Positions 503-63,563 of a stretch of 64,000 bases of DNA are shown here, piece by piece. The stretch is taken from the sequence record LT603033.1. One strand, given 5' to 3'. The notes beneath the pieces were generated by a model that ran no database searches, was not told where the DNA came from, and saw only the letters and a program-made list of their open reading frames with translations. A program made the position numbers and the translations under genes. Position 1 is the stretch's first letter. Each line of letters starts with the position of its first letter.

Positions 503-1069
503 ATGAGTACTGAATTAATTAAAGAAGTCACATTACTTCTGAAGCATTGTTTTAAGTTCATTCCTGATACTGGCTCACGCCAGTACATTAAAGTTAATGA
601 GAAATATAACATCAATATCCTTGTATCTGAAACTGCGAGCAGTTATGCTAACATTGAGTTGGATTCTGAAGAAAAATATACAGTATTACAAATCATAGCA
701 GATGTACAACGTAAACAAGATTATCGTTCTTCATTTTACAACGATTATCTGTGTGTTTGCTCAAACTTCAGTGAGAATAAAATTGTGTATAAGAATTTAT
801 ACACACATGAAGTGATTGATACATATAATTATAAAATTTCATCTGATGAATACAATGTTCTAATGTTCAACGCAAACCTTTTGTATGATGCCAGTACTGT
901 ACGCTGTTTAGAGTTAGCATATAAAATTCCAAAGATCATGGAAAGAAAAGATTTGATTCACTTTAAAACTATTTTAAAATACAGTACAAAAGAATTAGAG
1001 GATTTAGTACAGGCTCTTAAGAATTTCATTAATGAACATGTACCTGTTAAATTCGAGGATGCACAATGA
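503..1069 (+). CDS. Hypothetical protein
   Basis: GGAGGA RBS then ATG at 503. Confidence 0.75.
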   Translation: MSTELIKEVTLLLKHCFKFIPDTGSRQYIKVNEKYNINILVSETASSYANIELDSEEKYTVLQIIADVQRKQDYRSSFYNDYLCVCSNFSENKIVYKNLYTHEVIDTYNYKISSDEYNVLMFNANLLYDASTVRCLELAYKIPKIMERKDLIHFKTILKYSTKELEDLVQALKNFINEHVPVKFEDAQ

Positions 1070-1650
1070 ACCATATCAGAACTAAAATTTTGAGACTCAT
1101 GCATGACATTGCAGAACTTTCAGAGATTCATGACATTACGGAAATTGTTGAATTTGATAATTATCGACTGAAAATTGAAAACAAATCCAAACATCGTTTT
1201 GGTTCAGTTCAGTTGGATGTATATAAAACTTATGAATTTTCTAAAAAAATTAAAAGTTCATGGGATACGATTACTATGTACATTCGCACATCCAGAAATC
1301 GTGAACGTATTGGTTCTATTTCTTCTAATATGGTATTTGCGAATGCATTACATGAAAAAATGAATAAAATTGTAGAATCTGATTTCAGTGAAGATGATGG
1401 TTTTATTGGGTTGGATGTTCCACCAGAATTAGACCAAAGTGAAGATATTCGAGATGCATTCATTTTCCAGAAATCATTGTTGGACAATTACAAAGAATTC
1501 GAGTACTTAATGCTTTGTTACGATACTGCAAAAATTCTTGATTGTGGTGAACTAGTTATGTACAATGATTTTATCAATTGCAAGACTGATGTTCTGAATA
1601 CACTACTTCAAAATATAGAATCTGTTAAGGAAAAATATGAACGCTTATAG
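1066..1650 (+). CDS. Hypothetical protein, FQ-motif family
   Basis: ATGA overlap; DAFIFQKSL. Confidence 0.75.
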   Translation: MNHIRTKILRLMHDIAELSEIHDITEIVEFDNYRLKIENKSKHRFGSVQLDVYKTYEFSKKIKSSWDTITMYIRTSRNRERIGSISSNMVFANALHEKMNKIVESDFSEDDGFIGLDVPPELDQSEDIRDAFIFQKSLLDNYKEFEYLMLCYDTAKILDCGELVMYNDFINCKTDVLNTLLQNIESVKEKYERL

Positions 1651-2218
1651 TTATATGACAGAACGCCATCAGTTATTATATGATATCAGTAAAAAAATGC
1701 TATCAATTGTTGGTAGTGCGAAAGAAATTGAAAAACAATATCTCATCCGTGATGTATCAATTTCATCTAAATGTTGGTCAAATGAATATTACGACCACGG
1801 TATTCTTACTATTTCTGGGGCCAGAAATATTTGTATTGTAAAAAATAAAAGTAAAAGTAATGAAGAGTGTGAGATTAGAACCGATATACAAATTAAGGAT
1901 GATGGAAGTTTTTCACATCACCCATTCCATATTAGTACTATTGGTGTTTTATATAATATTAAAGTACTATTCGGTGATGAAGAGTATGTGTTAAAAGCTA
2001 TCAATCCAGATTCAAGTACAGTTGAAGAAGAACTGTTCCAGATGAGCACTGTTATACCTGAAGAGGTTCTTAGTACTGTTGTTTTTTGTAGTTTAATTTA
2101 TCATACATACAAAAAGAACCAATTCGATTTCCACATTTTAGGAACGTACATCTTCAATACTTTGAATGTTGATCGTTTAAAAGCATTAAATGCAGCAATG
2201 GATAAGGTGCTACAATGA
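1637..2218 (+). CDS. Hypothetical protein, FQ-motif family
   Basis: EEELFQMST. Confidence 0.75.
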   Translation: MNAYSYMTERHQLLYDISKKMLSIVGSAKEIEKQYLIRDVSISSKCWSNEYYDHGILTISGARNICIVKNKSKSNEECEIRTDIQIKDDGSFSHHPFHISTIGVLYNIKVLFGDEEYVLKAINPDSSTVEEELFQMSTVIPEEVLSTVVFCSLIYHTYKKNQFDFHILGTYIFNTLNVDRLKALNAAMDKVLQ

Positions 2219-2643
2219 CAAGAGATGATTGTTTGTACATATGGGATATAATTGAAACTACACTTTCAAATCCAGAAAATTATAAAACAAAAAAAAGACA
2301 ACGACACAAAATATGGATAGATTTGTTCGTTGAGGGCATACACGCAGTGACTATTTGGGATTCACCGAGGGCATCAGCATCTACTCTATTGGACAATGAA
2401 TGCATTGATTGCATTAATTCCACTTTTCATCTCTACGGTACTACATTTTTCGGTACATTTCTGGATATTGAAAGTAAAGATGATATTGATTCACTTGCGT
2501 TACAATACCAAGTACTGTATAATACTAAATTAATTTACGATTTAGTACTAGCTTCTTATGTGTATAAATTAATGATGAAATATAATCATATTTCTGTTTC
2601 AGTTTATACTAAGGATATTCTTTCATTAAGAGACAAAACATGA
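2215..2643 (+). CDS. Hypothetical protein
   Basis: ATGA-coupled ORF. Confidence 0.7.
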   Translation: MTRDDCLYIWDIIETTLSNPENYKTKKRQRHKIWIDLFVEGIHAVTIWDSPRASASTLLDNECIDCINSTFHLYGTTFFGTFLDIESKDDIDSLALQYQVLYNTKLIYDLVLASYVYKLMMKYNHISVSVYTKDILSLRDKT

Positions 2644-3149
2644 GTTTATTAAATGCACGCGAATTAGTTGAGATGTATGAGATTTTGTCTTCATATAAAA
2701 ATTCTCATGGAGATGTGATTCTCGACAAAAAGTTCCATGTCAGTGTTGAACATATATCAAATATAGATATGATTTCTTTGGTGGAAAGTAATAAGTCAGG
2801 TCTTGAACGCGATATCATGCGTTTGATTTATATTCCCAAACCATCATATACTAATGATAGTTCAATTAGTAATGAGACATTCATGTATAGTCCTGGTACG
2901 GATTCTACTATAGTATCGCTGTCCAATAAATCAATGGGTACTTTCCAATTCATCTATACCAGTACTGATAACATTGAAGAAATTGAATTTCAAAACAATA
3001 CATTAAGTCCATGTAGTAGTGTTATAACCTTTATGTCATATCTATGGTCAACTAAAACAAGTGCTGTTGTATATAGTTCAAATTATACACAAGATAGTAT
3101 TGTTGAATCATATAAAGTTCTAAAGGAATACTATGAAAATAACAAATGA
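2640..3149 (+). CDS. Hypothetical protein, FQ-motif family
   Basis: EEIEFQNNT. Confidence 0.7.
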   Translation: MSLLNARELVEMYEILSSYKNSHGDVILDKKFHVSVEHISNIDMISLVESNKSGLERDIMRLIYIPKPSYTNDSSISNETFMYSPGTDSTIVSLSNKSMGTFQFIYTSTDNIEEIEFQNNTLSPCSSVITFMSYLWSTKTSAVVYSSNYTQDSIVESYKVLKEYYENNK

Positions 3150-3714
3150 TTTTATTAAAAGTGTAGTACACCCTATGCTTAGTATTATGAAAAAAATACA
3201 GAATCTACCGGAAGATAACGATTACAAGTTTAATCGTTTTGATTCAGATGTGTTTTGTATTGAAATTGAAATTAATAACAATCGCAATTTACATTTAAAA
3301 TTCAAAGAATCGTCAAGTCCGTACTACAACTTTGATATGAATTTTAAAATAGATACTGACATTGAAGAAAACGTAATATCAAATCATACTAGCAAAAATG
3401 GTTTTATGCATAGAACTACTATGTACAATAATAAAAATAGTATTATATCTAAATGGAATCATCAATTCACTAAAATTTGTGAAATTGAATATAGTGATTT
3501 TGGTGAAGAGAATTACTTTCAGTTAAGTACAATTCATGAACTTCCACCGTATGATTATGTTAAAACATGGTTTGATATTCATAATATAATTGATGATGCA
3601 ATCAAACTTCCATTTGGTGTGTCAATATCATATACTGCTCCTAAAACATTTGTTTTTACTGAAGATATGATTATGAAAAAGATATGGGCAATTATCCCAC
3701 TTATGATGGATTAA
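3133..3714 (+). CDS. Hypothetical protein, FQ-motif family
   Basis: AAGGA RBS; EENYFQLST. Confidence 0.75.
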   Translation: MKITNDFIKSVVHPMLSIMKKIQNLPEDNDYKFNRFDSDVFCIEIEINNNRNLHLKFKESSSPYYNFDMNFKIDTDIEENVISNHTSKNGFMHRTTMYNNKNSIISKWNHQFTKICEIEYSDFGEENYFQLSTIHELPPYDYVKTWFDIHNIIDDAIKLPFGVSISYTAPKTFVFTEDMIMKKIWAIIPLMMD

Positions 3715-3718
3715 ATTC

Positions 3719-3757
3719 GTACCAGGGGTTGACTCTGGTATTTTTGTATGATACATT
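3719..3757 (+). promoter_or_regulatory. Terminator-like hairpin overlapping a sigma70-type promoter
   Basis: TACCAGGG/CTCTGGTA plus T run; TTGACT(3729)-17-TACATT(3752). Confidence 0.6.
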
Positions 3758-3775
3758 GTCCTAAAGGAGAATTTT

Positions 3776-4327
3776 ATGAACTACAATCATGATCTTTTTA
3801 CATTATGTGCATCCAAATGTGTTGATGGATGGACAGATAAAATCAATACCATAATTCATCGATATCTGGTCTTTAGTTCTCGTGCACGAAGTGAGGGGGC
3901 TATGGATTTCAAATATACACTATCTATTGATGGTGTAACTATCCATGCAGACGAAGAACGTCTGAGCATTAATTTGTATGATTCCTGTGTATTTGCTATT
4001 CACCAAAAGATGGGGAAAGGATGGGGTTGTAATAACATTAACTCAAAAGCTATCTTTTGGGTTGGTCACCACCAGACAGTACTTGATCCTTCAATCAAAT
4101 CTAATCTTTTATCCGATAATATGGTTTATGATTTATTGTACTCCGAAGAACAACATTTTCAGTTAAGTACATTACATGATCTGGCACAGTACGAGGATTG
4201 TTACAAAACATTAGAACTATGCCATTCCCTTGAACTTAAAGATAAATTGATACAAGTTTACCCTTCATTCTTTCATGAAGAAGTACAAAGTACACTAGAT
4301 CATATTTTATATGGATACGATAAATGA
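3776..4327 (+). CDS. Hypothetical protein, FQ-motif family
   Basis: AAGGAG RBS; EEQHFQLST. Confidence 0.8.
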   Translation: MNYNHDLFTLCASKCVDGWTDKINTIIHRYLVFSSRARSEGAMDFKYTLSIDGVTIHADEERLSINLYDSCVFAIHQKMGKGWGCNNINSKAIFWVGHHQTVLDPSIKSNLLSDNMVYDLLYSEEQHFQLSTLHDLAQYEDCYKTLELCHSLELKDKLIQVYPSFFHEEVQSTLDHILYGYDK

Positions 4328-4926
4328 GAAAAAGTTATCAAGAAGCTATTGACTTAATTCGTGAAGTTATCAAGGTGGCTCCTGCTGCTATTGAGTTCAA
4401 GAAGTCCATATACAAGAAGTATGGTTCAATGTCGAGTATGTGCTTTCAAAAGAAACGTAGAGCATTCACTACCCAGTACTGGAATGATTCTATCATCCTG
4501 AGCAATGAGACTCAGCGTATTTTAACACTAGAATCTGAACCTAATGAGTACGGGGAAGGGAACATTTGTGTACCTGATTATGATGAAATTAACTTCAACT
4601 GCGGTGATTTTGAAACAACATTATTACTTCATGAGGGTTATCCAGAAGGTGATGTATTAGCTGAGTACAATCCAAAAACTAAAATTCTCAAAAGAGGAAT
4701 CCAGTTCACTATTAATAACAAAGATGATGTTCAAGCAGCACTGATGCAACTGAGTACAAGTGAACCTATCACTATTAGTGTAGAAGAGTTATGGGGAATT
4801 ATTTCAGTACTCAATGAGTGCTACAAAGTAAAATCATTGCGTAAACACAGCATTATATTACATACCAATATGGCAAATATAAAATGTAAGCACATTCAAG
4901 AAATGGTGGTTCCAGATGGACTTTAA
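4324..4926 (+). CDS. Hypothetical protein, FQ-motif family
   Basis: AALMQLST. Confidence 0.75.
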   Translation: MRKSYQEAIDLIREVIKVAPAAIEFKKSIYKKYGSMSSMCFQKKRRAFTTQYWNDSIILSNETQRILTLESEPNEYGEGNICVPDYDEINFNCGDFETTLLLHEGYPEGDVLAEYNPKTKILKRGIQFTINNKDDVQAALMQLSTSEPITISVEELWGIISVLNECYKVKSLRKHSIILHTNMANIKCKHIQEMVVPDGL

Positions 4927-5500
4927 AGAAATTGAAAGTAAATTAAAGTACTTCAAAGATATCAAACTTCTTTGGAAAAAGTATAAAGTTGATTACAATT
5001 TCAGTGATGATGAGACAATAAAATACATTGAGATTAATATCAAAATCAAGTTCAAGAATAATAATTATGGTGAAGTAACCTTAAATCATACTGGTATATC
5101 ACTCAAGGACTATGATGGTACAACACTCGCATATTTTGACTTCACACCAGAACCAGGTGAAACACTACTTAGTGAGATAAATTCCTATGACATGGAAGTG
5201 TTCGGCGGGAATCCGTTACTGTTCCGACTTTCTGAAGAGTGGAGTGAAGAGTACTACACTTACAAAGATGGTGTAGTACTTGACATTCATGGAGAAGTTG
5301 TGAATGACTTGGAAGAACGTTTGTTCCAAGAATTGTGTGTTTCAAATACTTCATATGCATACAATCATATCCTTGACATGTTTGATTTATATAGTAAAAT
5401 AGATGCTGAAATGAAGGCACATGGTATTCATTACCTTACAATTAACGACTATGCTCAACTCGAAACCGCTGTGAAAGCATTGACTAAAGTACTGAAATAG
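4916..5500 (+). CDS. Hypothetical protein, FQ-motif family
   Basis: EERLFQEL. Confidence 0.75.
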   Translation: MDFKEIESKLKYFKDIKLLWKKYKVDYNFSDDETIKYIEINIKIKFKNNNYGEVTLNHTGISLKDYDGTTLAYFDFTPEPGETLLSEINSYDMEVFGGNPLLFRLSEEWSEEYYTYKDGVVLDIHGEVVNDLEERLFQELCVSNTSYAYNHILDMFDLYSKIDAEMKAHGIHYLTINDYAQLETAVKALTKVLK

Positions 5501-5509
5501 GAATGAAAT

Positions 5510-5923
5510 ATGAAACTGTATCATGCGAGTACTGTAAAAATTGATAACTTTTATATCCCGTATGGTGGTCTTCATATGGGAGGTAAACACAGTGCTTTGG
5601 AAGCTGCATTACGCAAGCTGAGAAGCCCACTGAACGTAGTAGACGCATGTACAGTATACTTGCATACCTTAGAAGTTGATGTTGATAACGTGCTTCTGTG
5701 TGAAGATTTAGGCAGTGATGATGAGTGGCGTTCACTTATTGAGAATTGCACTGCTCAAGGTTATGATGCTGTTCAGTACAAAAATGATTACGAGCCAGAC
5801 AATGTTCCTAGCTTTATGATTTGGGATGCATCTAAAGTTCGCATCATTGAAGTTGATGCTATGCATATGGATGAAGCTGAAATGATTATCGAAGATTTTC
5901 TTGATGAATATGAAGGTGTATAA
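5510..5923 (+). CDS. Putative ADP-ribosyltransferase-fold protein (ART-PolyVal-like)
   Basis: KLYHAST, GGLHMG, GYDAVQYKNDYE, SFMIWDASKVRI layout. Confidence 0.5.
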   Translation: MKLYHASTVKIDNFYIPYGGLHMGGKHSALEAALRKLRSPLNVVDACTVYLHTLEVDVDNVLLCEDLGSDDEWRSLIENCTAQGYDAVQYKNDYEPDNVPSFMIWDASKVRIIEVDAMHMDEAEMIIEDFLDEYEGV

Positions 5924-6459
5924 TGACTGACCCGATGGTAGCACTGGCACGTACTAAGTTACTATTAAAGATTGGTGAGATTTTTACGGTTCTTCTGTCC
6001 AATAATATTGATATTACTGAGCTAGATATTAAGCAACCGTGGGAAGTGACTATGTTCTCGGCGTTCCACCGATTGTCATATAAAGGTGAAAGTGTTCTTG
6101 ATTTTAACCCTAAAGCAAAATTCATAGATTATGCTGCGTTGTACAGAGAGTTGCACCGGAATATTTATTCCGGTTGTATAACCAATAACTTCAAAGAAAT
6201 TAAAGTTCAAACTGCATCACATGAGTTCAATGATTTACTTTATCCAGAATTTAATCTAACGGAAGAATTACTCTTTCAGTACTCGTTAATTCTCACAAAT
6301 CTCGAAACGCTAGAGTACTACAAAGAGTTAGTAGATATTTTTATGAATACACGACTTTCAAAAGATATTGTGATATTCTGGTATACAGAGCATGTTACGG
6401 AGGAATTGCTTACTGAATTTCTTCTAAATATGACAGCTATAAAGGAGAAGTTATGTTAG
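5923..6459 (+). CDS. Hypothetical protein, FQ-motif family
   Basis: EELLFQYSL. Confidence 0.75.
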   Translation: MTDPMVALARTKLLLKIGEIFTVLLSNNIDITELDIKQPWEVTMFSAFHRLSYKGESVLDFNPKAKFIDYAALYRELHRNIYSGCITNNFKEIKVQTASHEFNDLLYPEFNLTEELLFQYSLILTNLETLEYYKELVDIFMNTRLSKDIVIFWYTEHVTEELLTEFLLNMTAIKEKLC

Positions 6460-7775: not shown

Positions 7776-7817
7776 TAAAAACGCACATGGAGTGCATTAG
7801 AAGATCAAGGATAGATC

Positions 7818-8291: not shown

Positions 8292-8293
8292 TT

Positions 8294-8425
8294 ATGTCGA
8301 AGAAAGTTAACAATTTCGTACAGAAACATATGAATGAGTTTAATAAACCTCAGACACATGTGGATCGTAAAAAAGAAATGAAAAATGGTAAAGTAAAACA
8401 CAAGTCGAGATTTATTCTCGACTAA
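8294..8425 (+). CDS. Small basic protein, 43 aa (not in ORF track)
   Basis: GGAG RBS; MSKKVNNFVQKHMNEFNKPQTHVDRKKEMKNGKVKHKSRFILD; resembles small basic ORFs of T4-like phages. Confidence 0.7.
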   Translation: MSKKVNNFVQKHMNEFNKPQTHVDRKKEMKNGKVKHKSRFILD

Positions 8426-8432: not shown

Positions 8433-8454
8433 TCTAAATTTATGAGGATTGTAT

Positions 8455-11329: not shown

Positions 11330-11355
11330 GACATACCATAAGTTTATGATATAAT
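11328..11355 (+). promoter_or_regulatory. GGACA-class promoter upstream of candidate ncRNA
   Basis: GAGACA-16-TATAAT with TGA before the -10. Confidence 0.65.
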
Positions 11356-11359
11356 GTAA

Positions 11360-11392
11360 GGTGACAGCAGAATATGTTGTCGCCTTTTTTTT
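11360..11392 (+). terminator. Terminator-like hairpin immediately after the -10 box
   Basis: GGTGACAGCA-gaata-TGTTGTCGCC plus T8. Confidence 0.8.
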
Positions 11393-12007
11393 AATCCTGA
11401 AAGGTTCCATATGGAAATGATTAAAGCCTAATCCACTCGAAAAGTAGAGGGTAGATGAGTAGTCCTTTCAGTACGAACAGCAAATGAAACCCGTTAGATG
11501 ATGGCATAGTTTGAACCACTCACGGCAATGCGGCTGTATAAAGAACTCCAATAGGATAAAGAGAGTTCCTCGATAGACATATAAGGATCGCACCTTACCA
11601 ATTATCTAAGGGAGATTTCATGAGAAATTTGCGGTCGGAATTATACAATATAGTTGCGTCCAAATTTTGTGAAATCAAATACAAGTACTGGTCATATGGT
11701 ATTTGTATTATGTGTCGGGATGTTTAAGACCGACGACCGTTGCTACAAGAACCGCGATAGAGAGAAACAGAGCAACCCGCTTTCGTCTCGTAAGAGAATT
11801 CGTGATATGAACTATGTGAAGGCCACCAGCGTCAAACTTTTTTGTTCTTTCCCCTGCGGGGGGATGAAATATGCTCAAGCAAACCCCGTCAATATTAATT
11901 AAAAGAAAATAGTACTTGTAGAATTAGACATGCGTAGCATGGTAATTCTACTGATGTTGATGGAATCAACGTCACGTATATTCATTGATGTTTCCATAGG
12001 AATAATG
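11393..12007 (+). ncRNA. Candidate large structured non-coding RNA or cis-regulatory leader (family unknown; ends approximate)
   Basis: No credible ORF; about 41% GC over 11401-11880; more than 12 helices including long-range pairs, a three-way junction and a GNRA-capped hairpin. Confidence 0.7.
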
Positions 12008-12550
12008 ATGGCATTTATTAGAAAACAAAAAACTTTTACCTATAAGACTTTGGATTTTGTTGATTGTGAAAACCAATTACAAGATGAAGATAACTTTACA
12101 GGATTTGTTGTTATTAAAGAAAAAGGATGCATTTCGTATATAAAGGAATTACAGAACGGCATTGAAGTTACTTCAGTCAAATTACTTCCTACACAAAAAC
12201 CAACAATATTAAAAGCACAGTATGGTAATTATTTCGAGGAAAGATATAGTAATAATTTAATAAGTGTTAAGGCTCATATTATAAAAGGAGAACTAGAAGG
12301 AGAATATAGAAAATACAACCCACAAGGAAAATGTGTTTGGGTTAAATACTTCAATTCAGGAAATGATGTAACATCTGAAATAATTGAGTTTTTAGGTTTA
12401 ACATGTACCCCTGAAACTCTTCATGATTACAAATTTAATACTGAAGAAGAGTTTAATCTGATGATGCGTTATGGTTCACATTTTAAATTTTTATATGAAT
12501 ATAACATTGACAGTAGTACTTTTGATAAGATAGTACAGAACTGTCTCTAA
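12008..12550 (+). CDS. Hypothetical protein (MORN-like repeats; FQ-motif-like C-terminus)
   Basis: AGGA RBS at 11998; GELEGEYRKY..GK..W..YF..G; EEEFNLMMRYG. Confidence 0.75.
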   Translation: MAFIRKQKTFTYKTLDFVDCENQLQDEDNFTGFVVIKEKGCISYIKELQNGIEVTSVKLLPTQKPTILKAQYGNYFEERYSNNLISVKAHIIKGELEGEYRKYNPQGKCVWVKYFNSGNDVTSEIIEFLGLTCTPETLHDYKFNTEEEFNLMMRYGSHFKFLYEYNIDSSTFDKIVQNCL

Positions 12551-12566: not shown

Positions 12567-13088
12567 ATGTCGAAGAAGGATGCTTCGAAAAAACATTCAG
12601 TACATTTTAGTACTGGTAAAGATAACTGGACAACTCCAAAAGATTTCTTTGAAGAGTTAGATGAGTTATGGGGATTTACGCTTGATGCTGCTTGTGTTGA
12701 TGAGACTGCATTATGTGAGAATTATTTTACACCAAATGATGATTCTCTTTCACAGGATTGGGGAAAGAATATAGTTTGGTTGAACCCTCCATATAGTGAT
12801 TTGAAAACATGGTTATCTAAAGCAGTAGATGCGTATAATAAAGGGGCAACTGTATTAATTCTTGTACCATCAAGAACGGATACTATAGCCTTTCAGGATT
12901 ATGCTGCGAAAGTTTGTGATTGTATTTGTTTTATTAAGGGAAGGTTACGATTTGGTATCCCAGAAGAACCAGAGAAGAAAACAGATTCAGCACCATTTCC
13001 TTCGTGTCTGATAGTACTGGATAAGTACTTAACCACTGCTAAAATCAATTATCTTAAATCTCTTGGGTTGGTGATGAAGAATTTATGA
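12567..13088 (+). CDS. Phage-type DNA N6-adenine methyltransferase (small Dam-like family)
   Basis: W.TP..FF, FTLDAA, VWLNPPYS, LVPSRTDT, IKGRLRF, APFPS. Confidence 0.85.
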   Translation: MSKKDASKKHSVHFSTGKDNWTTPKDFFEELDELWGFTLDAACVDETALCENYFTPNDDSLSQDWGKNIVWLNPPYSDLKTWLSKAVDAYNKGATVLILVPSRTDTIAFQDYAAKVCDCICFIKGRLRFGIPEEPEKKTDSAPFPSCLIVLDKYLTTAKINYLKSLGLVMKNL

Positions 13089-13618
13089 AAGAAACATGTG
13101 TATTAACGTTTGGTCGTATTAATCCTGTACATCGTGGACATGGTTTAGTTTTTGAAAAGGCCAAAACATTACAAGAACAGTACAATGCTGATTTAAAAAT
13201 ATATCTAAGCACCAGTACTGACAATATAAAAAACCCACTCCCACCTGAACTAAAAATGTATTATACAGAGGGATTCTATCCTTCAGTGCAAGAGAACATC
13301 TACACAGAAGACAATCTATTTGATATAATGAGAGAACTGGATGGAAAGTACTTAGATGTTCTTTTCATTTGTGGTTCTGACCGTATTGATTCTTTTCAAA
13401 AAACTCTTGACATGTACAATGGTAAGTTGTATAATTTTTGTAGTATAAAAGCAATTCAAGCAGGTATTGACCGTAATGTAAGTCAATATAGCTCAACACA
13501 AATGCGTAACTTCGCAAAAAATGAAGATTTTGATAGTTTTCGTGAGTTTTTACCTGGAAATGACGAGGACTTAAAAATACAATTATTTGAAGACGTTATA
13601 AAATACATGAGGAAATAA
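13085..13618 (+). CDS. HxGH cytidylyl/nucleotidyltransferase-like protein
   Basis: TFGRINPVHRGH, CGSDR, YSSTQMR. Confidence 0.8.
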   Translation: MKETCVLTFGRINPVHRGHGLVFEKAKTLQEQYNADLKIYLSTSTDNIKNPLPPELKMYYTEGFYPSVQENIYTEDNLFDIMRELDGKYLDVLFICGSDRIDSFQKTLDMYNGKLYNFCSIKAIQAGIDRNVSQYSSTQMRNFAKNEDFDSFREFLPGNDEDLKIQLFEDVIKYMRK

Positions 13619-20382: not shown

Positions 20383-21521
20383 CCCTTTTGCAAATATATG
20401 AAGATTTAATGCACTTATGTAATACAAACGATGCATTCTTTTATGTGGATCATAAAAGTCCTGCTGGTGGCACGTATCGTGTATTCAGTTATCGTCTAGC
20501 ATCATACACTGATTTCATGCAACCAAATGCGTTGGAAACCCGTGGCTCTATGTGGGAAATTGATGAAGAAGGTGAAATGATACGTTGTGCAGCACGTACA
20601 ATGAAAAAGTTCTTCAATGCTTACGAGAATCCTGCTACAATGTTCCCTGCTAACACCACATGCGATGACATTGCGGTAGTGATGCCTAAGTTGGATGGTT
20701 CGATTATCAGTACTTACCGTGATAATGATGGTGAGATTCGTTGTAAATCACATACTGCATTGTATTCTGACCATGCGATTAACAGTACTCGACTTATTAA
20801 CGAGAACCAGAATTTGTATCAGTACATCGACGAAGCGGAACGTTTAGGTTACACAGTTAATATGGAGTATACAAGCCCAGAGTACCGAATTGTATTACCA
20901 TATCAGGTAGAACAACTGTTTGTACTGAACGTTCGTCATCGTGTGAGTGGTGAGTTGCTATGTGGTAAAGCACTACGTGATAAGTTTCCATGTCTTGCAC
21001 AGTACAGTACTAATATGACTGGAAAAGATATTCATCACACTTTTCCGGTACGAAATACCTTCCGTGAAAGCGTGGAGGAAGTTCATAAAATGCTTGATAT
21101 TGAGGGTTTTGTGTGCATCCTAAATAATGGGACAATGTGTAAAATAAAGACTGACTGGTACAGTTCATTACATCTTACAAAAGATAGTATTATTATTGAT
21201 TCTCATTTATATGAAGCAGTATTAAATGGTTCTAGTGATGATTTAAAACAATTGTTCAGTACTGATGAATATGCTATGCAAAAGATATTAAGAATGGAAC
21301 AATTGGTATTTTCGTGCTATAATGCATTACAAGATGAAGTAGAAAGCTTCGTCAAGGAACACAAGCACTTGGAGCGAAAGGAATTCGCAATGAAGGTTCA
21401 GGAGTGTTTAACTAATGAACTGAATCGTCAGGGCTTGGCCTTTGCAATGTATAACAATAAGAAAGTTGATTACAAAGAGACTCTTATAAAATACATGAAA
21501 ATTGTACTAAAGGATTTTTAG
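20379..21521 (+). CDS. rnlA: RNA ligase 1 (T4 RnlA-like)
   Basis: FSYRLASY, MKKFFN, motif I PKLDGS, EYTSPEYRIV, EGFV, KIKTDWY. Confidence 0.9.
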   Translation: MTLLQIYEDLMHLCNTNDAFFYVDHKSPAGGTYRVFSYRLASYTDFMQPNALETRGSMWEIDEEGEMIRCAARTMKKFFNAYENPATMFPANTTCDDIAVVMPKLDGSIISTYRDNDGEIRCKSHTALYSDHAINSTRLINENQNLYQYIDEAERLGYTVNMEYTSPEYRIVLPYQVEQLFVLNVRHRVSGELLCGKALRDKFPCLAQYSTNMTGKDIHHTFPVRNTFRESVEEVHKMLDIEGFVCILNNGTMCKIKTDWYSSLHLTKDSIIIDSHLYEAVLNGSSDDLKQLFSTDEYAMQKILRMEQLVFSCYNALQDEVESFVKEHKHLERKEFAMKVQECLTNELNRQGLAFAMYNNKKVDYKETLIKYMKIVLKDF

Positions 21522-21551
21522 TACTATCTAGCCTAAGCACAAGGAGAAGTG

Positions 21552-33701: not shown

Positions 33702-33992
33702 ATGAAAGTACTAGTACGTAATAATACGGAAGTAGCAAATGTATTAGAAGATTCCGATTTTATTAATGTTGCGTTCGATCAAATTAGTGCAGTAGCACTT
33801 GAATTAAAAAATGTAGATGAATCTGAGCGTGTGCTGAATGGTTTTGCAATTGTACTTGAATTAATGAAGGAAGTACTANNNNNNNNNNNNNNNNNNNNNG
33901 TTGATGCGGTTCAACATGCAGAAGCTGTGCGTAAAGAACACGGTACATTCTCTGACAAAAAATACATTCAAACTGATGAGGTAAAAGAATAA
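33702..33992 (+). CDS. Hypothetical protein (contains N gap)
   Basis: GGAG RBS; frame kept across gap. Confidence 0.65.
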   Translation: MKVLVRNNTEVANVLEDSDFINVAFDQISAVALELKNVDESERVLNGFAIVLELMKEVLXXXXXXXVDAVQHAEAVRKEHGTFSDKKYIQTDEVKE

Positions 33993-33993
33993 T

Positions 33994-34440
33994 ATGTCCA
34001 ATGCACAATATAAAGATGGTTATGACGCATACAAAGCAAAAGTAGTTCTAAGTGCTGAACAGCTAAAAATGCAGCATCCATTATATCGTCAGGGCTATCG
34101 TGCAGCACAAGCAGAAGCAATGAAGAAAAATAATGTAACTTTCCCTACTACACTATATGATATTCCAAAACGTCCACACATTTTTAAAGCTGAATGGACT
34201 GATATTATGGCAGCGACAAAGCGTCCACGCTTTGCTAAATTACACACCGATGAAGGTCGCTGGTTGCTAATGGGGATTATGAAAGCAGTTGAGAATCAAT
34301 CTCATAAGATTGTTCGTTATAAAGATGTTGTTNNNNNNNNNNNNNNNNNNNNNNNCCTTGTACTTCAATATGGTTATGATGAAGGTGTTCTAACTGTCGC
34401 TGATTGTGAAAAATATCAGTACACCCCATATCAAAAATAA
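33994..34440 (+). CDS. Hypothetical protein (contains N gap)
   Basis: ORF; terminator follows. Confidence 0.7.
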   Translation: MSNAQYKDGYDAYKAKVVLSAEQLKMQHPLYRQGYRAAQAEAMKKNNVTFPTTLYDIPKRPHIFKAEWTDIMAATKRPRFAKLHTDEGRWLLMGIMKAVENQSHKIVRYKDVVXXXXXXXXLVLQYGYDEGVLTVADCEKYQYTPYQK

Positions 34441-34450
34441 TATTGTGAAA

Positions 34451-34479
34451 AGGAATCCTATCATGGGATTCCTATTTTT
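34451..34479 (+). terminator. Intrinsic terminator
   Basis: AGGAATCCTA-tca-TGGGATTCCT plus ATTTTT. Confidence 0.8.
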
Positions 34480-34566
34480 ATTGCTGTATATCAATTTTCC
34501 ATTGATCATATTTTGATCTATATGAGCTAAATACCCAAGGAATCATTGTTACTAGGGTAGGTGAAT

Positions 34567-35115
34567 ATGCAGCAATATAATTTAACTGAAGAACAAAGTG
34601 ATATTTTTTACCATCATNNNNNNNNNNNNNNNNNNNNNNNTTTAAAAATTAATTCTGAAGCAATTGATATATTGAAGAAATGGTATAGTTGTTATAATAA
34701 AAACAAAAAGTGGTATTGGTTTAATAGAAATATAAAATCATTTCTAAAAACAATCACATACACTGATAGTATTGAGTTAATACATAGTTCTATTGGATAT
34801 AGTTACTTAACTAAACACAACAGTACTATGATGTTATCAGGGTTTAAAGTTGAAAGAATTTCCAAGTTAACAGGTTTGTCATTAGAAACAATTCTATATG
34901 ATATTGAGAAAATTTGGAAAACTATAGAATTAATGCATAAAAATATGTCATTCATATATAGAAATNNNNNNNNNNNNNNNNNNNNNNNNNNNNATCATAA
35001 TAAACCGTATGTATTGGATGAAAAGTACTATAATCATATGGAAGTTTGTTCTAAACTCGTTGATGATTGGAATCTAGAGGGACATAATGAAATACACACA
35101 CCTAAGTATAGATGA
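34567..35115 (+). CDS. Hypothetical protein (contains N gaps)
   Basis: ORF across two small gaps. Confidence 0.6.
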   Translation: MQQYNLTEEQSDIFYHHXXXXXXXXLKINSEAIDILKKWYSCYNKNKKWYWFNRNIKSFLKTITYTDSIELIHSSIGYSYLTKHNSTMMLSGFKVERISKLTGLSLETILYDIEKIWKTIELMHKNMSFIYRNXXXXXXXXXXHNKPYVLDEKYYNHMEVCSKLVDDWNLEGHNEIHTPKYR

Positions 35116-35611
35116 TACTAATATCTGGTTAGATAACATAATCAAGACATTAGAATTAATTAAACTTACATTACAAAAAACTACTGATATTGAAATTAAT
35201 ATTAAACAAGAAATATTAAACTATTATCATAGAAACAAATATAGCACGTTTATCTCTAAATTAATTTATGGATTATATGATATTGAAGATATTTGCATCG
35301 GTTACAGTACTGGTATTTGCTTCACAGTTAATGGTTTAAAAAATGATTTAAATTTCAGACTTTCCGATGAAGAGCAAGATTTTCGTAGATTTTGTGATAA
35401 TATTATGGATACAGATAAAATTACATTTGTTATTGAATTAAATCAAACGTGGTCTACATATGCAGATAAACCATTTGAAATTAATGAAACAGATGTGTTA
35501 AACTATATTCGAGTTATGAAAATTCATGATTTGTGTAAAAACGCATTGTTAAGTATTGGAGCTTATAATGAAACATACGACTTGGTTGAAGATAGCAGAA
35601 GTAGTTGCTGA
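35087..35611 (+). CDS. Hypothetical protein
   Basis: GAGGGA RBS. Confidence 0.7.
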   Translation: MKYTHLSIDDTNIWLDNIIKTLELIKLTLQKTTDIEINIKQEILNYYHRNKYSTFISKLIYGLYDIEDICIGYSTGICFTVNGLKNDLNFRLSDEEQDFRRFCDNIMDTDKITFVIELNQTWSTYADKPFEINETDVLNYIRVMKIHDLCKNALLSIGAYNETYDLVEDSRSSC

Positions 35612-36047
35612 GGAAAGTAAATGTATTTCACAANNNNNNNNNNNNNNNNNNNNNNNNNNNNNNNNNNNNNNNNNNNNNNNNNNNNNNNNNNNNNNNNNNN
35701 NNNNNNNNNNNNNNNNNNNNNNNNNNNNNNNNNNNNNNNNNNNNNNNNNNNNNNNNNNNNNNNNNNNNNNNNNNNNNNNNNNNNNNNNNNNNNNNNNNNN
35801 NNNNNNNNNNNNNNNNNNNNNNNNNNNNNNNNNNNNNNNNNNNNNNNNNNNNNNNNNNNNNNNNNNNNNNNNNNNNNNNNNNNNNNNNNNNNNNNNNNNN
35901 NNNNNNNNNNNNNNNNNNNNNNNNNNNNNNNNNNNNNNNNNNNNNNNNNNNNNNNNNNNNNNNNNNNNNNNNNNNNNNNNNNNNNNNNNNNNNNNNNNNN
36001 NNNNAATTATTGTTAATTGCATTTATGATAAGGGTCTTGATAAATGA
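35568..36047 (+). CDS. cd: Probable dCMP deaminase, mostly hidden by N gap
   Basis: N-terminus MKHTTWLKIAEVVAEESKCIS resembles T4 Cd (MKASTVLQIAYLVSQESKCCS); catalytic motifs fall in the gap. Confidence 0.65.
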   Translation: MKHTTWLKIAEVVAEESKCISQXXXXXXXXXXXXXXXXXXXXXXXXXXXXXXXXXXXXXXXXXXXXXXXXXXXXXXXXXXXXXXXXXXXXXXXXXXXXXXXXXXXXXXXXXXXXXXXXXXXXXXXXXXXXXXXXXXXXXXXXXXXXIIVNCIYDKGLDK

Positions 36048-36232
36048 CAGTAATAATTATTATTGCTTTTCTAATAACAGTGTTTTTCATTTTTATGTTA
36101 TATATAGTTGCTATGGATGAACCTAATACTTCTTTTCGAAATTATGAAGTTCGTTTTTCTGCACAAAATAATAAGTACTATATTGTAAACTGTATACACC
36201 GTAGTGAGAAAAGGGTAACAAGTAGATTTGGA
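36044..36232 (+). CDS. Membrane-anchored hypothetical protein; 3-prime end lost in gap
   Basis: Hydrophobic N-terminus, ATGA overlap. Confidence 0.55.
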
Positions 36233-36331
36233 NNNNNNNNNNNNNNNNNNNNNNNNNNNNNNNNNNNNNNNNNNNNNNNNNNNNNNNNNNNNNNNNNNNN
36301 NNNNNNNNNNNNNGTATGGCTCCTTTTTTTG

Positions 36332-46148: not shown

Positions 46149-46504
46149 GTGATTATGTAGCATTTCTTCATCGCTTTGGAGAAGCTAAAGAAAAACATAT
46201 TATCCGTATGCCATTATATGGTGAAAAAGACTGGTACAAAAGTACTATCAGTGTAGGTGCATTTCGTGACCGTGAAGCTGGATTCTTTCTGGGTAAGAAA
46301 CATGAACGAGAGGTACTTTGCTCACTGTGGCGTTTGGATGAATGGGATAGTGAGAACGTAAGAACTGCTGAATCAATGCTGGCTATTGTTGGTATTGCGA
46401 ACTATCAGCATCCATATGACCTATTACCTACATTTGAACATGCTTCTTTGTTTGACTTTTACAAAGCAGTAGGGTATGATTATAAAAAGAAACGTTACAT
46501 TTAA
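46145..46504 (+). CDS. Hypothetical protein
   Basis: Coupled ORF. Confidence 0.8.
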   Translation: MSDYVAFLHRFGEAKEKHIIRMPLYGEKDWYKSTISVGAFRDREAGFFLGKKHEREVLCSLWRLDEWDSENVRTAESMLAIVGIANYQHPYDLLPTFEHASLFDFYKAVGYDYKKKRYI

Positions 46505-46508
46505 TATC

Positions 46509-46535
46509 AGTACTGTCATAATGGCAGTACTTTTT
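46509..46535 (+). terminator. Intrinsic terminator built from two AGTACT sites
   Basis: AGTACTGTCA-taa-TGGCAGTACT plus T run. Confidence 0.75.
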
Positions 46536-46549
46536 AATTGGAGATTACT

Positions 46550-62541: not shown

Positions 62542-62542
62542 A

Positions 62543-63154
62543 ATGAACAAATATCATGTTTACTATACGACAAAATTATCACTTCTTGACGAATTAAATC
62601 AACGAAGTACTAAGATGAAACGCTACACTTTAAATGGAATTACTTTTAGGTATTTCCCACAAAAAGTTCTTACATTTATTAAGAATCCAAAATGCGTGGC
62701 ATGTGGGATTGAAGCCACTGAAGTACGCATTGAACGTTCATTTTGTTCTGATCCAGTATATGGTAAACCACATTTAAATGTATATGCTGTATGTGGTCTT
62801 TATGAAGTGTTGATGACAGTTGATCATAATCATCTGGCATCTAAGGGTGGACCTGATTTAGAGTCAAACTTTAATACTATGTGCTCCAGATGTAATCAAC
62901 TACGTTCGAATAAAACTGAAACAGTTGATGAGTTTCTTGAGAAAGTTAAAGGTCGTAATCTTCTCCAAGAACATATGAATAATTTCTTTAATGTACAAAA
63001 AAAGAAAAATAACATTGACAAGTCGAAACTACTAGAAGAACGTAGGTTACGTCAAGAATTATGGGAAACTGATCATCTATGGCATGTTCGAGAGTTTGGT
63101 CGTCATATGAAAGCTTTGAAAAAAGAACAGAAGAAATTGAATAAACATGATTGA
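62543..63154 (+). CDS. HNH endonuclease-domain protein
   Basis: AAGGA RBS; CVACG, MTVDH...SKGG...N...MCSRCNQLRSNK. Confidence 0.8.
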   Translation: MNKYHVYYTTKLSLLDELNQRSTKMKRYTLNGITFRYFPQKVLTFIKNPKCVACGIEATEVRIERSFCSDPVYGKPHLNVYAVCGLYEVLMTVDHNHLASKGGPDLESNFNTMCSRCNQLRSNKTETVDEFLEKVKGRNLLQEHMNNFFNVQKKKNNIDKSKLLEERRLRQELWETDHLWHVREFGRHMKALKKEQKKLNKHD

Positions 63155-63195
63155 TATGATATTATAGGGACTTGATTATTCAAGTCCTTTTTTTT
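63137..63195 (+). promoter_or_regulatory. sigma70-like promoter followed immediately by terminator hairpin
   Basis: TTGAAT-17-TATTAT(63160); GGACTTGA-ttat-TCAAGTCC plus T run. Confidence 0.6.
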
Positions 63196-63206
63196 GGAGA
63201 AAATAA

Positions 63207-63563
63207 ATGAAATCTAAAATCTTTTTACCACAATTAATGTGGCATCTAGCAGAGTTAGATGAAAATGATGAATATACTGACTATGGTGCATGGGATGACA
63301 GTACTGAAACTTTTAAACCAGATGTAAAATATAAAATCATCTGCAATGAAAGCAAAGGACACAGAAGGTGGACTGAAGAATTTGATCTCGTATTTCTTGA
63401 CATGAGCACAAATAAGTTTTATCATTGTACTTATGAACGAGGTTTAACAGAAGATAGACCAGTACAACCATTCAGTACTGAAACTGATGGTGTTAAGTGC
63501 AATGAAGTTTCTGTTACCAGAGAAGAAATTATCACTTATCGAACTTTGTGGAAATATTTGTAA
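63207..63563 (+). CDS. Hypothetical acidic protein
   Basis: GGAG RBS. Confidence 0.75.
   Translation: MKSKIFLPQLMWHLAELDENDEYTDYGAWDDSTETFKPDVKYKIICNESKGHRRWTEEFDLVFLDMSTNKFYHCTYERGLTEDRPVQPFSTETDGVKCNEVSVTREEIITYRTLWKYL

What the first reader, a model, noticed from the sequence alone, without database searches (positions are those of the whole stretch)
506..63479. Palindrome AGTACT over-represented about 8-fold across the window: a HIP1-like genome signature
Seen in sequence: a hand count gives about 180 AGTACT sites, against about 22 expected from base composition (about 63,200 called bases at about 32% GC). Sites occur in all three frames: Ser-Thr at 506, Glu-Tyr-Leu at 1502, Ser-Val-Leu at 13626. 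They also occur over a stop codon (21520), in the candidate ncRNA (11684, 11911) and in a terminator stem (46509, 46526). They are often extended to CAGTACTG. The same-composition palindrome ACTAGT was noticed only a few times (not counted exhaustively). Density is about 3.5/kb in the first 20 kb and lower near the right end. Established: phages usually avoid 6-bp palindromes because of restriction, and AGTACT is the ScaI site. Cyanobacterial HIP1 and enterobacterial GATC are precedents for selected, methylase-linked palindromes. Inference: DNA-level selection for a site that a phage protein binds, methylates or uses in recombination, repair, packaging or self/non-self marking.
Basis: partly seen in the sequence, partly recalled or inferred. 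Interest (0 to 1): 0.85.

Follow-up and report, generated by a model that had tools for sequence, protein, structure and literature searches.

The report
Selected AGTACT palindrome in jumbo phages
A giant E. coli phage and all its close relatives carry the six-letter palindrome AGTACT about nine times too often and conserve it even at silent codon positions; this looks like a phage version of the unexplained cyanobacterial HIP1 palindrome and is probably tied to the phage's own DNA methylases.

Summary
The window is Escherichia phage vB_Eco_slurp01 (LT603033.1, bases 124001-188000). It has 183 AGTACT sites against 17-21 expected; the whole genome has 901 against 118. The excess is not a codon or GTAC artefact. 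Synonymous shuffles give 42±6 coding sites in the window against 163 observed. A-before and T-after GTAC are coupled (odds ratio 3.1). Silent positions inside sites are conserved across relatives (ACT 89% vs 62%). ST, QY and VL are among the most over-used dipeptides.

AGTACT is the top hexamer in all 13 RaK2-like genomes sampled and is not enriched in the Pseudomonas sister clade. It co-occurs with a Dam-family adenine methylase encoded in the window (12567-13088) and with total absence of GCGC. The C/G flanks track a second, DNMT3-like cytosine methylase, but that link is weaker. Sites are spaced more evenly than random, are densest in the terminal-repeat early region, and sit at fixed positions in σ70-type promoters.

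My best reading (about 0.4): a selected, methylase-linked iterated palindrome that serves as a dense epigenetic or self mark. Methylation of AGTACT itself is untested. An 8.3 kb block carrying only the one-sided variant AGTACA remains unexplained.

The parts
506..63479 (.). The set of 183 AGTACT sites. 163 lie fully inside called genes, in all three frames, and 20 lie in non-coding or partly coding DNA.
   Evidence: shuffle controls
12567..13088 (+). Gene for a 173-aa Dam-family N6-adenine DNA methyltransferase (PF05869, E 6e-32). It is the candidate writer of the mark. No restriction partner is annotated beside it or found among the neighbours I scanned.
   Evidence: Pfam; PHROG 111. Homologues are present in 12 of 12 other AGTACT-rich genomes and absent from MIJ3
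12008..12550 (+). Conserved upstream neighbour of the methylase gene (180 aa, PHROG 16210, unknown function)
   Evidence: the same gene order is seen in CBB
13085..13618 (+). Conserved downstream neighbour, a cytidylyltransferase-like protein
11330..12007 (+). Gene-free stretch upstream of the methylase operon with two sites (11684, 11911). At 11911 the site abuts a -35-like TTGTAG. No Rfam match.
46494..46541 (+). Two sites (46509, 46526) forming the arms of a 10-bp hairpin followed by a T run. The same DNA also reads as a σ70-type promoter, GTTACA-17-CATAAT, with the site in the spacer directly upstream of the -10.
21519..21525 (+). Site overlapping the TAG stop codon of the RNA ligase gene
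33879..36313 (.). Region holding six masked N runs; a seventh lies at 38153-38430. Not read. Coordinates are continuous across them.

Best explanation
AGTACT is a positively selected, clade-wide iterated palindrome, a phage counterpart of cyanobacterial HIP1.

Shown: selection acts on the DNA word itself. It acts in coding DNA in every frame, at silent positions, strongly enough to distort dipeptide usage, and in non-coding DNA. It favours a dense and fairly even coverage of the genome, about one site per 390 bp. That is close to the density I recall for GATC in E. coli (about one per 240 bp, from memory, not checked here).

Inferred, and the mechanism I commit to: the word is the target of the phage's own orphan Dam-family adenine methylase, encoded in the window at 12567-13088. 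Methylated sites would serve as an epigenetic or self mark on phage DNA, read by a symmetric DNA-binding factor. The mark would have two uses. One is local control of early σ70-type promoters in the terminal-repeat region, where sites sit against the -35 and directly upstream of the -10. The other is a genome-wide function that needs a site within about 2 kb of everywhere, for example telling fully methylated from newly replicated DNA, organising or packaging the 348 kb genome, or telling phage from host DNA.

The preference for C before and G after the site is a separate, weaker layer that follows a second, DNMT3-like cytosine methylase.
For: 1. Size and reach of the excess: 183 vs 17-21 in the window and 901 vs 118 in the genome. 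Every 10 kb bin is enriched.
2. Not a coding artefact: synonymous shuffles give 218 ± 14 vs 740 observed (genome) and 42 ± 5.6 vs 163 (window). 52% of Ser-Thr pairs are written AGT-ACT against 15% expected.
3. Not a GTAC bias: A-before and T-after are coupled, odds ratio 3.1, P 6e-42.
4. Purifying selection: against TH47 (83% identity) 68% of sites are kept vs 38% of all hexamers; against a Klebsiella phage (72%) it is 37% vs 18%. With the amino acid conserved, the codon is identical in-site vs off-site for ACT .89/.62, GTA .82/.51 and TAC .82/.53 (P values).
5. Proteome imprint: ST is the top dipeptide (1.48; TS 0.98), with QY at 1.43 and VL at 1.40.
6. Clade-wide: AGTACT is the top hexamer (5.4-10.9x) in 121Q, TH47, RaK2, a Klebsiella phage, Hallingskeid, GAP32, XbC2, CBB, Munch, PHA46, Yen9-04, BF and an IMG/VR genome. 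It is at 0.25x in MIJ3 and 0.5-2x in eight other contigs whose terminase is about 43-45% identical.
7. The Dam-family methylase is present in all 13 enriched genomes and absent from MIJ3.
8. RaK2 virion DNA is reported to resist methylation-sensitive enzymes and to carry m5C (PMC3622015, data not shown there).
9. Other short palindromes are avoided (GCGC 0, GGCC .43, CCGG .54, GATC .59). So this genome is under ordinary restriction pressure, and AGTACT must be protected or beneficial.
10. Even spacing: gap CV .81-.83, P about 0.0004; the longest gap in the conserved half is 2.1 kb vs 3.6 kb expected.
11. Promoter placement: about a third of intergenic sites lie 1-3 nt upstream of a -10-like hexamer, while coding sites match chance. 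Pairs 20-25 bp apart occur twice as often as expected. The hotspot of 6-7 sites per kb coincides with the terminal repeat in slurp01 and in CBB.
12. The flanks track the C5 methylase in 8 genomes with it vs 5 without, needing at least two changes on the tree.
Against: No methylation data exist for AGTACT in any of these phages.

The specificity of the Dam-family enzyme is unknown. The family members I recall as characterised (T1 and Stx-phage Dam) methylate GATC and are only 31-36% identical to it.

The methylase is one of many genes that separate this clade from the Pseudomonas clade, so 13 of 13 against 0 of 1 is weak as a correlation.

No reader protein has been identified, and there is no MutH or Vsr homologue.

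The link between C5 and the flanks rests on one strong contrast and one weak one: Mimasvirus vs Eneladusvirus is 35% vs 28% on single flanks (P 0.12) and 31/186 vs 6/102 for CAGTACTG (P 0.009). The C5 enzyme looks CpG-specific, and CAGTACTG contains no CpG.

A conserved 8.3 kb block uses the non-palindromic AGTACA instead, which a simple 'symmetric methylated site' model does not predict.
Confidence: 0.4

Rival explanations
1. The sites are binding sites for a sequence-specific dimeric DNA-binding protein (phage-encoded, or less likely host) that acts without methylation. This would be a global transcription regulator or nucleoid-organising protein that also occupies early promoters.
For: The site is palindromic. 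It sits at fixed promoter positions, abutting the -35 and directly upstream of the -10, often as pairs about 20 bp apart. The hotspot lies in the early, terminal-repeat region in two genera. Spacing is even.
Against: No candidate protein has been found. About 82% of sites (740 of 901) are inside genes, away from promoters, and these are conserved too. The only host protein I know with AGTACT at the centre of its site, SlmA, fits worse than chance. This rival does not explain the co-distribution with the methylases, although it is compatible with it.
Confidence: 0.27
2. The functional unit is an oriented single-strand word, (C)AGTAC, read by an enzyme that tracks along one strand (a primase, helicase or nuclease-control signal, in the manner of Chi). 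The palindrome would simply be the cheapest way to place the unit on both strands.
For: Block 1 (record 104113-112398) has 43 AGTACA on the sense strand (expected 3.8), in all frames, with the same C/G flanks. It has no AGTACT and no TGTACT, and it is conserved in TH47 and ECO103. Outside the two blocks AGTACA is about 1.5-fold commoner on the sense strand (my tally from the 4-kb bins). The block lies just inside the terminal repeat.
Against: Outside block 1, the non-palindromic AGTACN words are only 1.5-2.3x enriched, against 9x for the palindrome. The two flanks are strongly coupled (odds ratio 3.1-3.3), which independent oriented units would not give. The mirror-image block 2 is a tandem array of paralogues and so is not independent evidence. 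No such block was seen in the parts of other genera I sampled.
Confidence: 0.12
3. A neutral by-product of biased repair or mutation tied to methylation (Elhai's model for HIP1), in which a repair system keeps converting near-sites into sites without any function for the sites.
For: The link to methylases is the same as for HIP1 (PMC4390886). Relatives show many lineage-specific sites, so there is turnover.
Against: None of the 18 one-mismatch neighbours shows the depletion expected of a source: most are at or above expectation (AGTATT 1.1-1.26) and only AGGACT/AGTCCT is low (about 0.5). A conversion process strong enough to give a ninefold excess should drain its source. No Vsr homologue was found. 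CpG depletion does not differ between genomes with and without the C5 gene. The same positions are retained across 72-83% identical genomes, which argues for selection and not replenishment, as Xu et al. argued for HIP1 (PMC5861425). The even spacing is not explained either.
Confidence: 0.08
4. A compositional, codon-usage or dipeptide artefact, or a side effect of general GTAC enrichment.
For: A maximal-order Markov model built from pentamers predicts most of the count (observed/expected 1.21). GTAC as a whole is 2.2x enriched.
Against: The pentamer counts are themselves dominated by the hexamer: 68% of all AGTAC lie in AGTACT. The excess survives the synonymous and codon-order shuffles. Non-coding DNA is richer than coding DNA (4.4 vs 2.4 per kb). 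The flanks are coupled.
Confidence: 0.01

Closest known systems
HIP1 (GCGATCGC), the highly iterated palindrome of cyanobacteria
   Same: Both are short palindromes that are hyper-abundant across a whole clade, inside and between genes. Both are conserved beyond coding constraint, non-randomly spaced, and accompanied by two orphan methylases, one N6-adenine and one C5-cytosine (PMC4390886, PMC5861425, PMC13756078; here).
   Different: HIP1 is in a cellular genome; this is in a virus. HIP1 is a GC-rich 8-mer at 15-300x; here the unit is an AT-rich 6-mer at about 9x (44x for the 8-mer CAGTACTG, whose outer bases are not coupled to each other). For HIP1 the methylase targets are known and nested within it; here neither target is known, and the C5 enzyme looks CpG-specific, so it cannot act within CAGTACTG. 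HIP1 shows periodicity of 10-90 kb; here I tested only local evenness. The one-sided AGTACA block has no HIP1 counterpart that I know of.
Dam/GATC in enterobacteria
   Same: An orphan adenine methylase is present and its presumed palindromic target has similar density (here about 2.6 sites per kb, against about 4 per kb for GATC in E. coli, which is my recollection). GATC sites also occur in promoters, and the mark distinguishes old from new DNA.
   Different: GATC is a 4-mer that needs no enrichment to be dense. The phage has no MutH homologue (SeqA was not searched). GATC itself is depleted in this phage (0.59x).
Restriction-site (palindrome) avoidance in phages; AGTACT is the ScaI/Eco255I site
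   Same: The phage shows classic avoidance for other palindromes (GCGC 0 of 176 expected, GGCC, CCGG, GATC).
   Different: AGTACT goes the opposite way, so it is either protected by methylation or not targeted in the hosts.
Chi, DNA uptake sequences and KOPS (over-represented functional words)
   Same: These too are genome-wide, selected, over-represented short words read by a DNA-processing machine. Chi itself is also about 11x enriched in this phage.
   Different: Those words are asymmetric and their orientation matters. AGTACT is a palindrome. Only the AGTACA block behaves like a polar word.
SlmA-binding sites (GTGAGTACTCAC)
   Same: They share the central AGTACT, and the hosts are Enterobacterales, which I recall have SlmA.
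   Different: The phage flanks fit the SlmA consensus worse than chance: 5 sites have two or fewer flank mismatches against 20.5 expected (consensus from PMC3020112).

Membership tests
HIP-type iterated palindrome | A short palindrome many-fold over-represented genome-wide | tested here: met
   901 vs 118 sites; 9.0x under a dinucleotide model; top hexamer
HIP-type iterated palindrome | Present across a clade of related genomes, not in one genome only | tested here: met
   13 of 13 RaK2-like genomes at 5.4-10.9x; not enriched in MIJ3 or in the other contigs with about 43-45% terminase identity
HIP-type iterated palindrome | Sites conserved within and between ORFs beyond coding constraint | tested here: met
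   Site retention 68% vs 38% and 37% vs 18%; synonymous codons in sites kept more often
HIP-type iterated palindrome | Orphan methyltransferases in the genome that methylate the palindrome or a nested part of it | tested here: inconclusive
   Two methylase genes are present and co-distributed, but their targets are unknown. Homology cannot assign specificity.
HIP-type iterated palindrome | Non-random (periodic or even) distribution along the chromosome | tested here: met
   Gap CV .81-.83, P about 0.0004. Long-range periodicity was not tested.
Methyl-directed mismatch-repair mark (Dam/GATC type) | A MutH-type endonuclease that reads hemimethylated sites | tested here: not met
   PF02976 absent from 5 clade genomes; the control rings in E. 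coli
VSP-type biased repair product | A Vsr endonuclease and depletion of the deamination neighbour | tested here: not met
   PF03852 absent; AGTATT observed/expected 1.1-1.26
SlmA-binding site | GTG...CAC flanks around AGTACT | tested here: not met
   5 vs 20.5 expected with two or fewer flank mismatches
Promoter element | Located at a fixed distance upstream of transcription units, and oriented | tested here: inconclusive
   True for about a third of intergenic sites, but 82% of sites are inside genes with no excess of -10-like hexamers
Polar (Chi/KOPS-like) word | Asymmetric sequence with strand or orientation bias | tested here: not met
   The word is a palindrome and its halves are coupled. 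Only the AGTACA block is polar.
Restriction-avoided palindrome | Under-representation | tested here: not met
   Ninefold over-representation, while GCGC, GGCC, CCGG and GATC are under-represented

The most novel reading that the evidence does not exclude
RaK2-like jumbo phages run a two-word DNA identity code of their own. AGTACT, written by their Dam-family methylase, is kept at about one site per 400 bp as a positive 'self' or epigenetic mark that a phage factor reads. That factor would use it for early-promoter control in the terminal repeat and for genome-wide replication, packaging or protection. GCGC is forbidden outright because a phage- or host-borne activity destroys DNA that carries it. 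If so, this would be the first HIP1-like system in a virus, and it is in an E. coli phage where the decades-old question of what such iterated palindromes do can be answered by ordinary genetics.
Probability: 0.25. Interest if true: 0.9.

Novelty: new variant of a known kind. Interest (0 to 1): 0.78.

Why it matters
Phages are textbook avoiders of short palindromes, and this genome does avoid several. A palindrome held at ninefold excess by selection strong enough to skew silent codon positions and dipeptide usage, across at least five genera and eight host genera, therefore points to an unrecognised DNA-level function in a whole group of 350 kb phages.

The nearest precedent, cyanobacterial HIP1, has resisted explanation for about thirty years. 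A coliphage analogue with a 173-aa candidate methylase can be tested with standard tools: methylome sequencing, ScaI digestion, gene knock-out and promoter reporters.

The result also has practical value. AGTACT density together with GCGC absence is a simple signature for recognising this clade in metagenomes. It also warns that recoding or synthesising these phage genomes for therapy could destroy a functional layer.

I found no paper in the searched library that reports the motif.

Tried and rejected
1. Codon, dipeptide or GTAC artefact: rejected.

2. VSP-type conversion from one neighbour: no neighbour shows the depletion a source would, and there is no Vsr.

3. Birth of AGTACTG from AGTACCG by m5CpG deamination, as an explanation of the flanks: not supported. 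CpG depletion overlaps between genomes with and without the C5 gene, and AGTACCG is not depleted.

4. SlmA sites: the flanks fit worse than chance.

5. Phage-encoded MutH: absent.

6. An N4-cytosine methylase (the type I recall for M.ScaI) as the universal writer: CBB and GAP32 have one, but a search with the available part of the CBB protein finds none in slurp01.

7. Inferring methylase specificity by homology: the closest homologues outside the clade are 42-46% identical (a Staphylococcus phage and Lactococcus phages), the GATC-specific T1 and Stx enzymes are 31-36% identical, and there is no solved structure.

8. 'Orientation flip around an origin' between the two AGTACT-free blocks: withdrawn. 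Block 2 is a tandem array of 22 paralogues, and GC skew shows no switch between the blocks.

9. 'The deserts are the terminal repeat': wrong. The terminal repeat is the hotspot, and the deserts start at its inner edge.

10. Read-end pile-ups at sites (nicks or cuts): not testable. All 24 listed runs are kept as contigs.

11. Rfam on the window: no match.

12. Literature searches for the motif in these phages: nothing found.

13. No whole genome is held for the window. I rebuilt the record from annotated stretches, keeping the window's N runs.

Full report
**What the window is.** Bases 1-20000 and 38600-63500 of the window match Escherichia phage vB_Eco_slurp01 (LT603033.1) at 100% identity, at record positions 124001-144000 and 162600-187500. 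This is a 348,043-bp jumbo myovirus of the genus Asteriusvirus, related to 121Q, PBECO4 and RaK2. The offset is the same on both sides of the N runs, so the masks have exact length and coordinates are continuous. I did not read the masked letters in this record or in relatives. No whole genome is held for the window. I therefore assembled the record from annotated stretches outside the masked part and kept the window's N runs in place.

**The observation.** AGTACT occurs 183 times in the window. Base composition predicts 21, and dinucleotide-preserving shuffles give 17.3 ± 4.5 with a maximum of 29. It is the most over-represented hexamer by a wide margin. The next palindrome reaches only 1.45x, and ACTAGT, which has the same composition, has 9 sites. 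Genome-wide there are 901 sites against 118 expected, and every 10 kb bin is enriched, with 9 to 67 sites against about 3.4.

**Is it a by-product of something else?** No.
- Shuffling synonymous codons within each gene keeps every protein and each gene's codon usage. It gives 218 ± 14 coding sites against 740 observed, and 42 ± 5.6 against 163 in the window alone.
- Shuffling codon order gives 130 ± 12.
- 52% of Ser-Thr pairs are written AGT-ACT, where codon usage predicts 15%.
- Non-coding DNA is richer than coding DNA, at 4.4 vs 2.4 sites per kb.
- A pentamer-based Markov model predicts most of the count (ratio 1.21). That is circular, because 68% of all AGTAC pentamers lie inside AGTACT.
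- The direct test is whether an A before GTAC and a T after it are coupled. They are, with an odds ratio of 3.1 and P of 6e-42. So the complete hexamer is favoured beyond any GTAC or half-site bias.
- The further preference for C before and G after the site (45% each against about 21-23% background; CAGTACTG 190 vs about 4.4 expected) is real. But the two outer bases are independent of each other (odds ratio 1.16), so the unit is the hexamer.

**Selection.**
- Against TH47 (83% identity, 136 kb aligned), 158 of 233 sites are retained (68%), compared with 38% of all hexamers.
- Against a Klebsiella phage (72% identity, 98 kb aligned), 61 of 165 sites are retained (37%), compared with 18% (P 3e-20 and 5e-9).
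- Where the amino acid is conserved, the codon is identical far more often inside sites than outside. In TH47 the figures are ACT .89 vs .62, GTA .82 vs .51 and TAC .82 vs .53.
- Relatives also carry many sites of their own, so there is turnover around a maintained density.
- The word has left a mark on the proteins. ST is the most over-represented dipeptide (1.48; TS 0.98). QY (1.43) and VL (1.40) are also near the top. These are the pairs the word encodes in its three frames.
- None of the 18 one-mismatch neighbours shows the depletion expected of a source; most are at or above expectation and only AGGACT/AGTCCT is low (about 0.5). This argues against a conversion process feeding on one neighbour.

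**Distribution.**
- Spacing is more even than random in the two large gene blocks. The gap CV is .81-.83 (P about 0.0004), also against a null drawn from near-site positions. The longest gap in the conserved half is 2.1 kb, where 3.6 kb is expected.
- Pairs 20-25 bp apart occur twice as often as expected, and otherwise spacing is near random at short range.
- Density peaks at 6-7 sites per kb between about 72 and 96 kb of the record. There many sites sit in σ70-type promoters. Some abut the -35 (AAAGTACTTGCAA-N17-TATAAT). Others lie in the spacer directly upstream of the -10 (TTGACA...AGTACTG-TATAAT). Often both positions are occupied.
- About a third of intergenic sites have a -10-like hexamer 1-3 nt downstream, whereas coding sites match chance.
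- This hotspot corresponds to the direct terminal repeat. Sharanji has a 20,668-bp repeat (PMC11895373). The CRJP21 record ends at the equivalent of slurp01 base ~96,218, and several longer records carry this region at their ends.
- In CBB, whose 22,456-bp repeat is supported by read depth and PFGE (PMC5259590), the repeat holds 143 sites, or 6.4 per kb.

**Phylogenetic range.** In the orthologous terminase neighbourhood, or in larger samples, AGTACT is the top hexamer in all 13 RaK2-like genomes examined, at 5.4 to 10.9x. These cover Asteriusvirus, the RaK2 group, Mimasvirus, Eneladusvirus, the Munch group and Hallingskeid. Their recorded hosts are Escherichia, Klebsiella, Salmonella, Cronobacter, Pectobacterium, Serratia, Yersinia, Erwinia and (as recorded) Xanthomonas. 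In the Pseudomonas phage MIJ3 (terminase 43% identical) it is at 0.25x, and in eight metagenomic relatives of that kind it is at 0.5-2x.

**Candidate machinery.**
- *The Dam-family enzyme.* The window encodes a 173-aa Dam-family N6-adenine methyltransferase (12567-13088; PF05869, E 6e-32). No restriction enzyme is annotated next to it, and the neighbours I scanned have unknown functions. Homologues are present in all 12 other enriched genomes and absent from MIJ3.
- *The C5 enzyme.* A second enzyme, a 286-aa C5-cytosine methyltransferase (record 2929-3789), has as its closest solved relatives the catalytic domains of DNMT3A/B/C (E 3e-23, full length), ahead of M.HaeIII and M.HhaI. The RaK2 paper reports, as data not shown, that RaK2 DNA is cut only by methylation-insensitive enzymes and that bisulfite sequencing shows methylated CpG (PMC3622015).
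- *C5 and the flanks.* The C5 gene is present in the eight genomes with strong C/G flanks (33-46% C at -1; 16-28% of sites are CAGTACTG). It is absent from the five without (26-30%; 2-7%). Five of these assignments were predictions made before the search, and all held. A three-protein tree requires at least two changes of the C5 state. One contrast is strong: Asteriusvirus, RaK2 and Hallingskeid against the Munch clade, 44% vs 29%, P 2e-6. The other is weak: Mimasvirus against Eneladusvirus, 35% vs 28%, P 0.12 on single flanks, and P 0.009 for the double flank. I treat this link as suggestive only.
- *What homology cannot tell.* The specificity of neither enzyme can be inferred by homology.

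**Context: ordinary palindrome avoidance elsewhere.** GCGC is absent from the whole slurp01 genome (0 against 176 expected) and from every clade genome sampled (0 against about 560 expected in total). In MIJ3 it is normal (38 vs 42). GGCC, CCGG and GATC are at 0.43-0.59x. So the clade is shaped by restriction-type pressure, and AGTACT, the ScaI/Eco255I site, runs against it.

**How it most likely works.** Selection on the DNA word is shown. The rest is inferred. The combination of features closely matches cyanobacterial HIP1 (PMC4390886, PMC5861425, PMC13756078). Those features are a palindrome, clade-wide reach, dense and even coverage, conservation at silent positions, two orphan methylases, heavily methylated virion DNA in RaK2, and placement inside early promoters.

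I therefore commit to the following, with a probability of about 0.4. AGTACT is the target of the Dam-family enzyme. The methylated sites are read as an epigenetic or self mark, locally at early promoters in the terminal repeat, and globally by a process that needs a site within about 2 kb of everywhere.

The main rival (0.27) is a dimeric DNA-binding protein acting without methylation. A polar single-strand reading (0.12) is kept alive by one unexplained observation, described next. Neutral biased repair (0.08) and compositional artefact (0.01) are unlikely.

**Unexplained.** Directly inside the terminal repeat lie two stretches free of AGTACT. The first (record 96.3-102.4 kb) is a tandem array of 22 paralogous small genes, so its lack of sites and its repeated TGTACT are not independent events. 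The second (record 104113-112398, ending 11.6 kb left of the window) contains 18 unrelated genes. It has no AGTACT but 43 AGTACA, all on the sense strand, against 3.8 expected. These lie in all three frames and in intergenic DNA, with the same C/G flank preferences. TH47 and ECO103 have the same block. 27 of 35 aligned AGTACA sites are retained in TH47, and none is AGTACT in either relative. So one conserved 8 kb region is under selection for a one-sided version of the word. I saw no such block in the parts of other genera that I sampled.

**Novelty.** I found no report of the motif, of the GCGC absence or of the AGTACA block in the papers on these phages or in full-text searches. Iterated methylase-linked palindromes are known from cyanobacteria, so this is a new variant of a known kind, in a virus and in a tractable host.

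**Limits.**
- Relatives were sampled as stretches of 21-167 kb, not as whole genomes.
- Gene frames come from a greedy ORF call that matches the annotation where I checked it.
- The methylase correlation has only one clear negative genome.
- No sequencing run with raw reads was available.

Noticed in passing
whole window (0 sites); whole record LT603033.1; loci L009, L020-L039: GCGC is completely absent: 0 in the window, 0 vs 176 expected in the genome, and 0 vs about 560 expected across all 13 clade genomes sampled. It is normal in the Pseudomonas relative MIJ3 (38 vs 42). Absolute avoidance across many host genera suggests a phage-borne or universal GCGC-directed nuclease.
   Followed up: partly
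outside the window: record 104113-112398 (L008:4113-12398), ending 11.6 kb left of window base 1: An 8.3 kb block of 18 unrelated small genes has no AGTACT but 43 AGTACA on the sense strand (expected 3.8). They occur in all frames, with the same C/G flanks, and are conserved in TH47 (L037) and ECO103 (L038).
   Followed up: partly
outside the window: record 96.3-102.4 kb (L007/L008): A tandem array of 22 paralogous genes of about 70-80 aa begins at the inner edge of the terminal repeat. About 5.4 kb of it (96,082-101,460) holds no AGTACT.
   Followed up: partly
outside the window: record ~75.8-96.2 kb (L007): The AGTACT hotspot coincides with the inferred ~20.7 kb direct terminal repeat. GC skew switches sign sharply at about 76 kb. 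The ORFs at 72-76 kb are annotated on the + strand but have negative GC skew.
   Followed up: partly
outside the window: record 76.1-78.3 kb (L007:26100-28300): A gene-free stretch of about 2.2 kb with repeat arrays that carry AGTACT: roughly 60-bp repeats at 76321-76501 and roughly 53-bp repeats at 78062-78168. It could be an origin or a regulatory hub.
   Followed up: no
window 20463, 28400 (+), 11823 (-); genome-wide: The E. coli Chi sequence GCTGGTGG is about 11x enriched in the phage (26 vs 2.4 expected; 18 on the + strand, 8 on the - strand), and it is also enriched in relatives.
   Followed up: partly
outside the window: record 2929-3789 (L006); TH47 record 175441-177327: The phage C5 methylase is closest to DNMT3 catalytic domains among solved structures. 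In TH47 the gene is split by an insert of about 1 kb within one 633-aa open frame, which may be an intein or a homing endonuclease.
   Followed up: no
whole window: GATC is depleted (0.59x genome-wide; TGATCA 0.25x and AGATCT 0.16x in the window) even though the phage carries a Dam-family gene. This is a hint that the enzyme may not be GATC-specific.
   Followed up: no
window 38153-38430: There is a seventh N run of 278 bases that the scan's note on the finding did not list.
   Followed up: yes
window 8000-14000: Near-identical DNA (54-74% of sampled words) is present in 19 further public runs from 12 other studies, from bovine gut, wastewater, manure and freshwater, so this phage group is widespread.
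   Followed up: no
loci L036 and L039 (CBB), GAP32: Mimasvirus genomes carry a further N4-cytosine methylase, and GAP32 is reported to carry a second adenine methylase. Methylase content varies within the clade while the AGTACT excess does not.
   Followed up: partly
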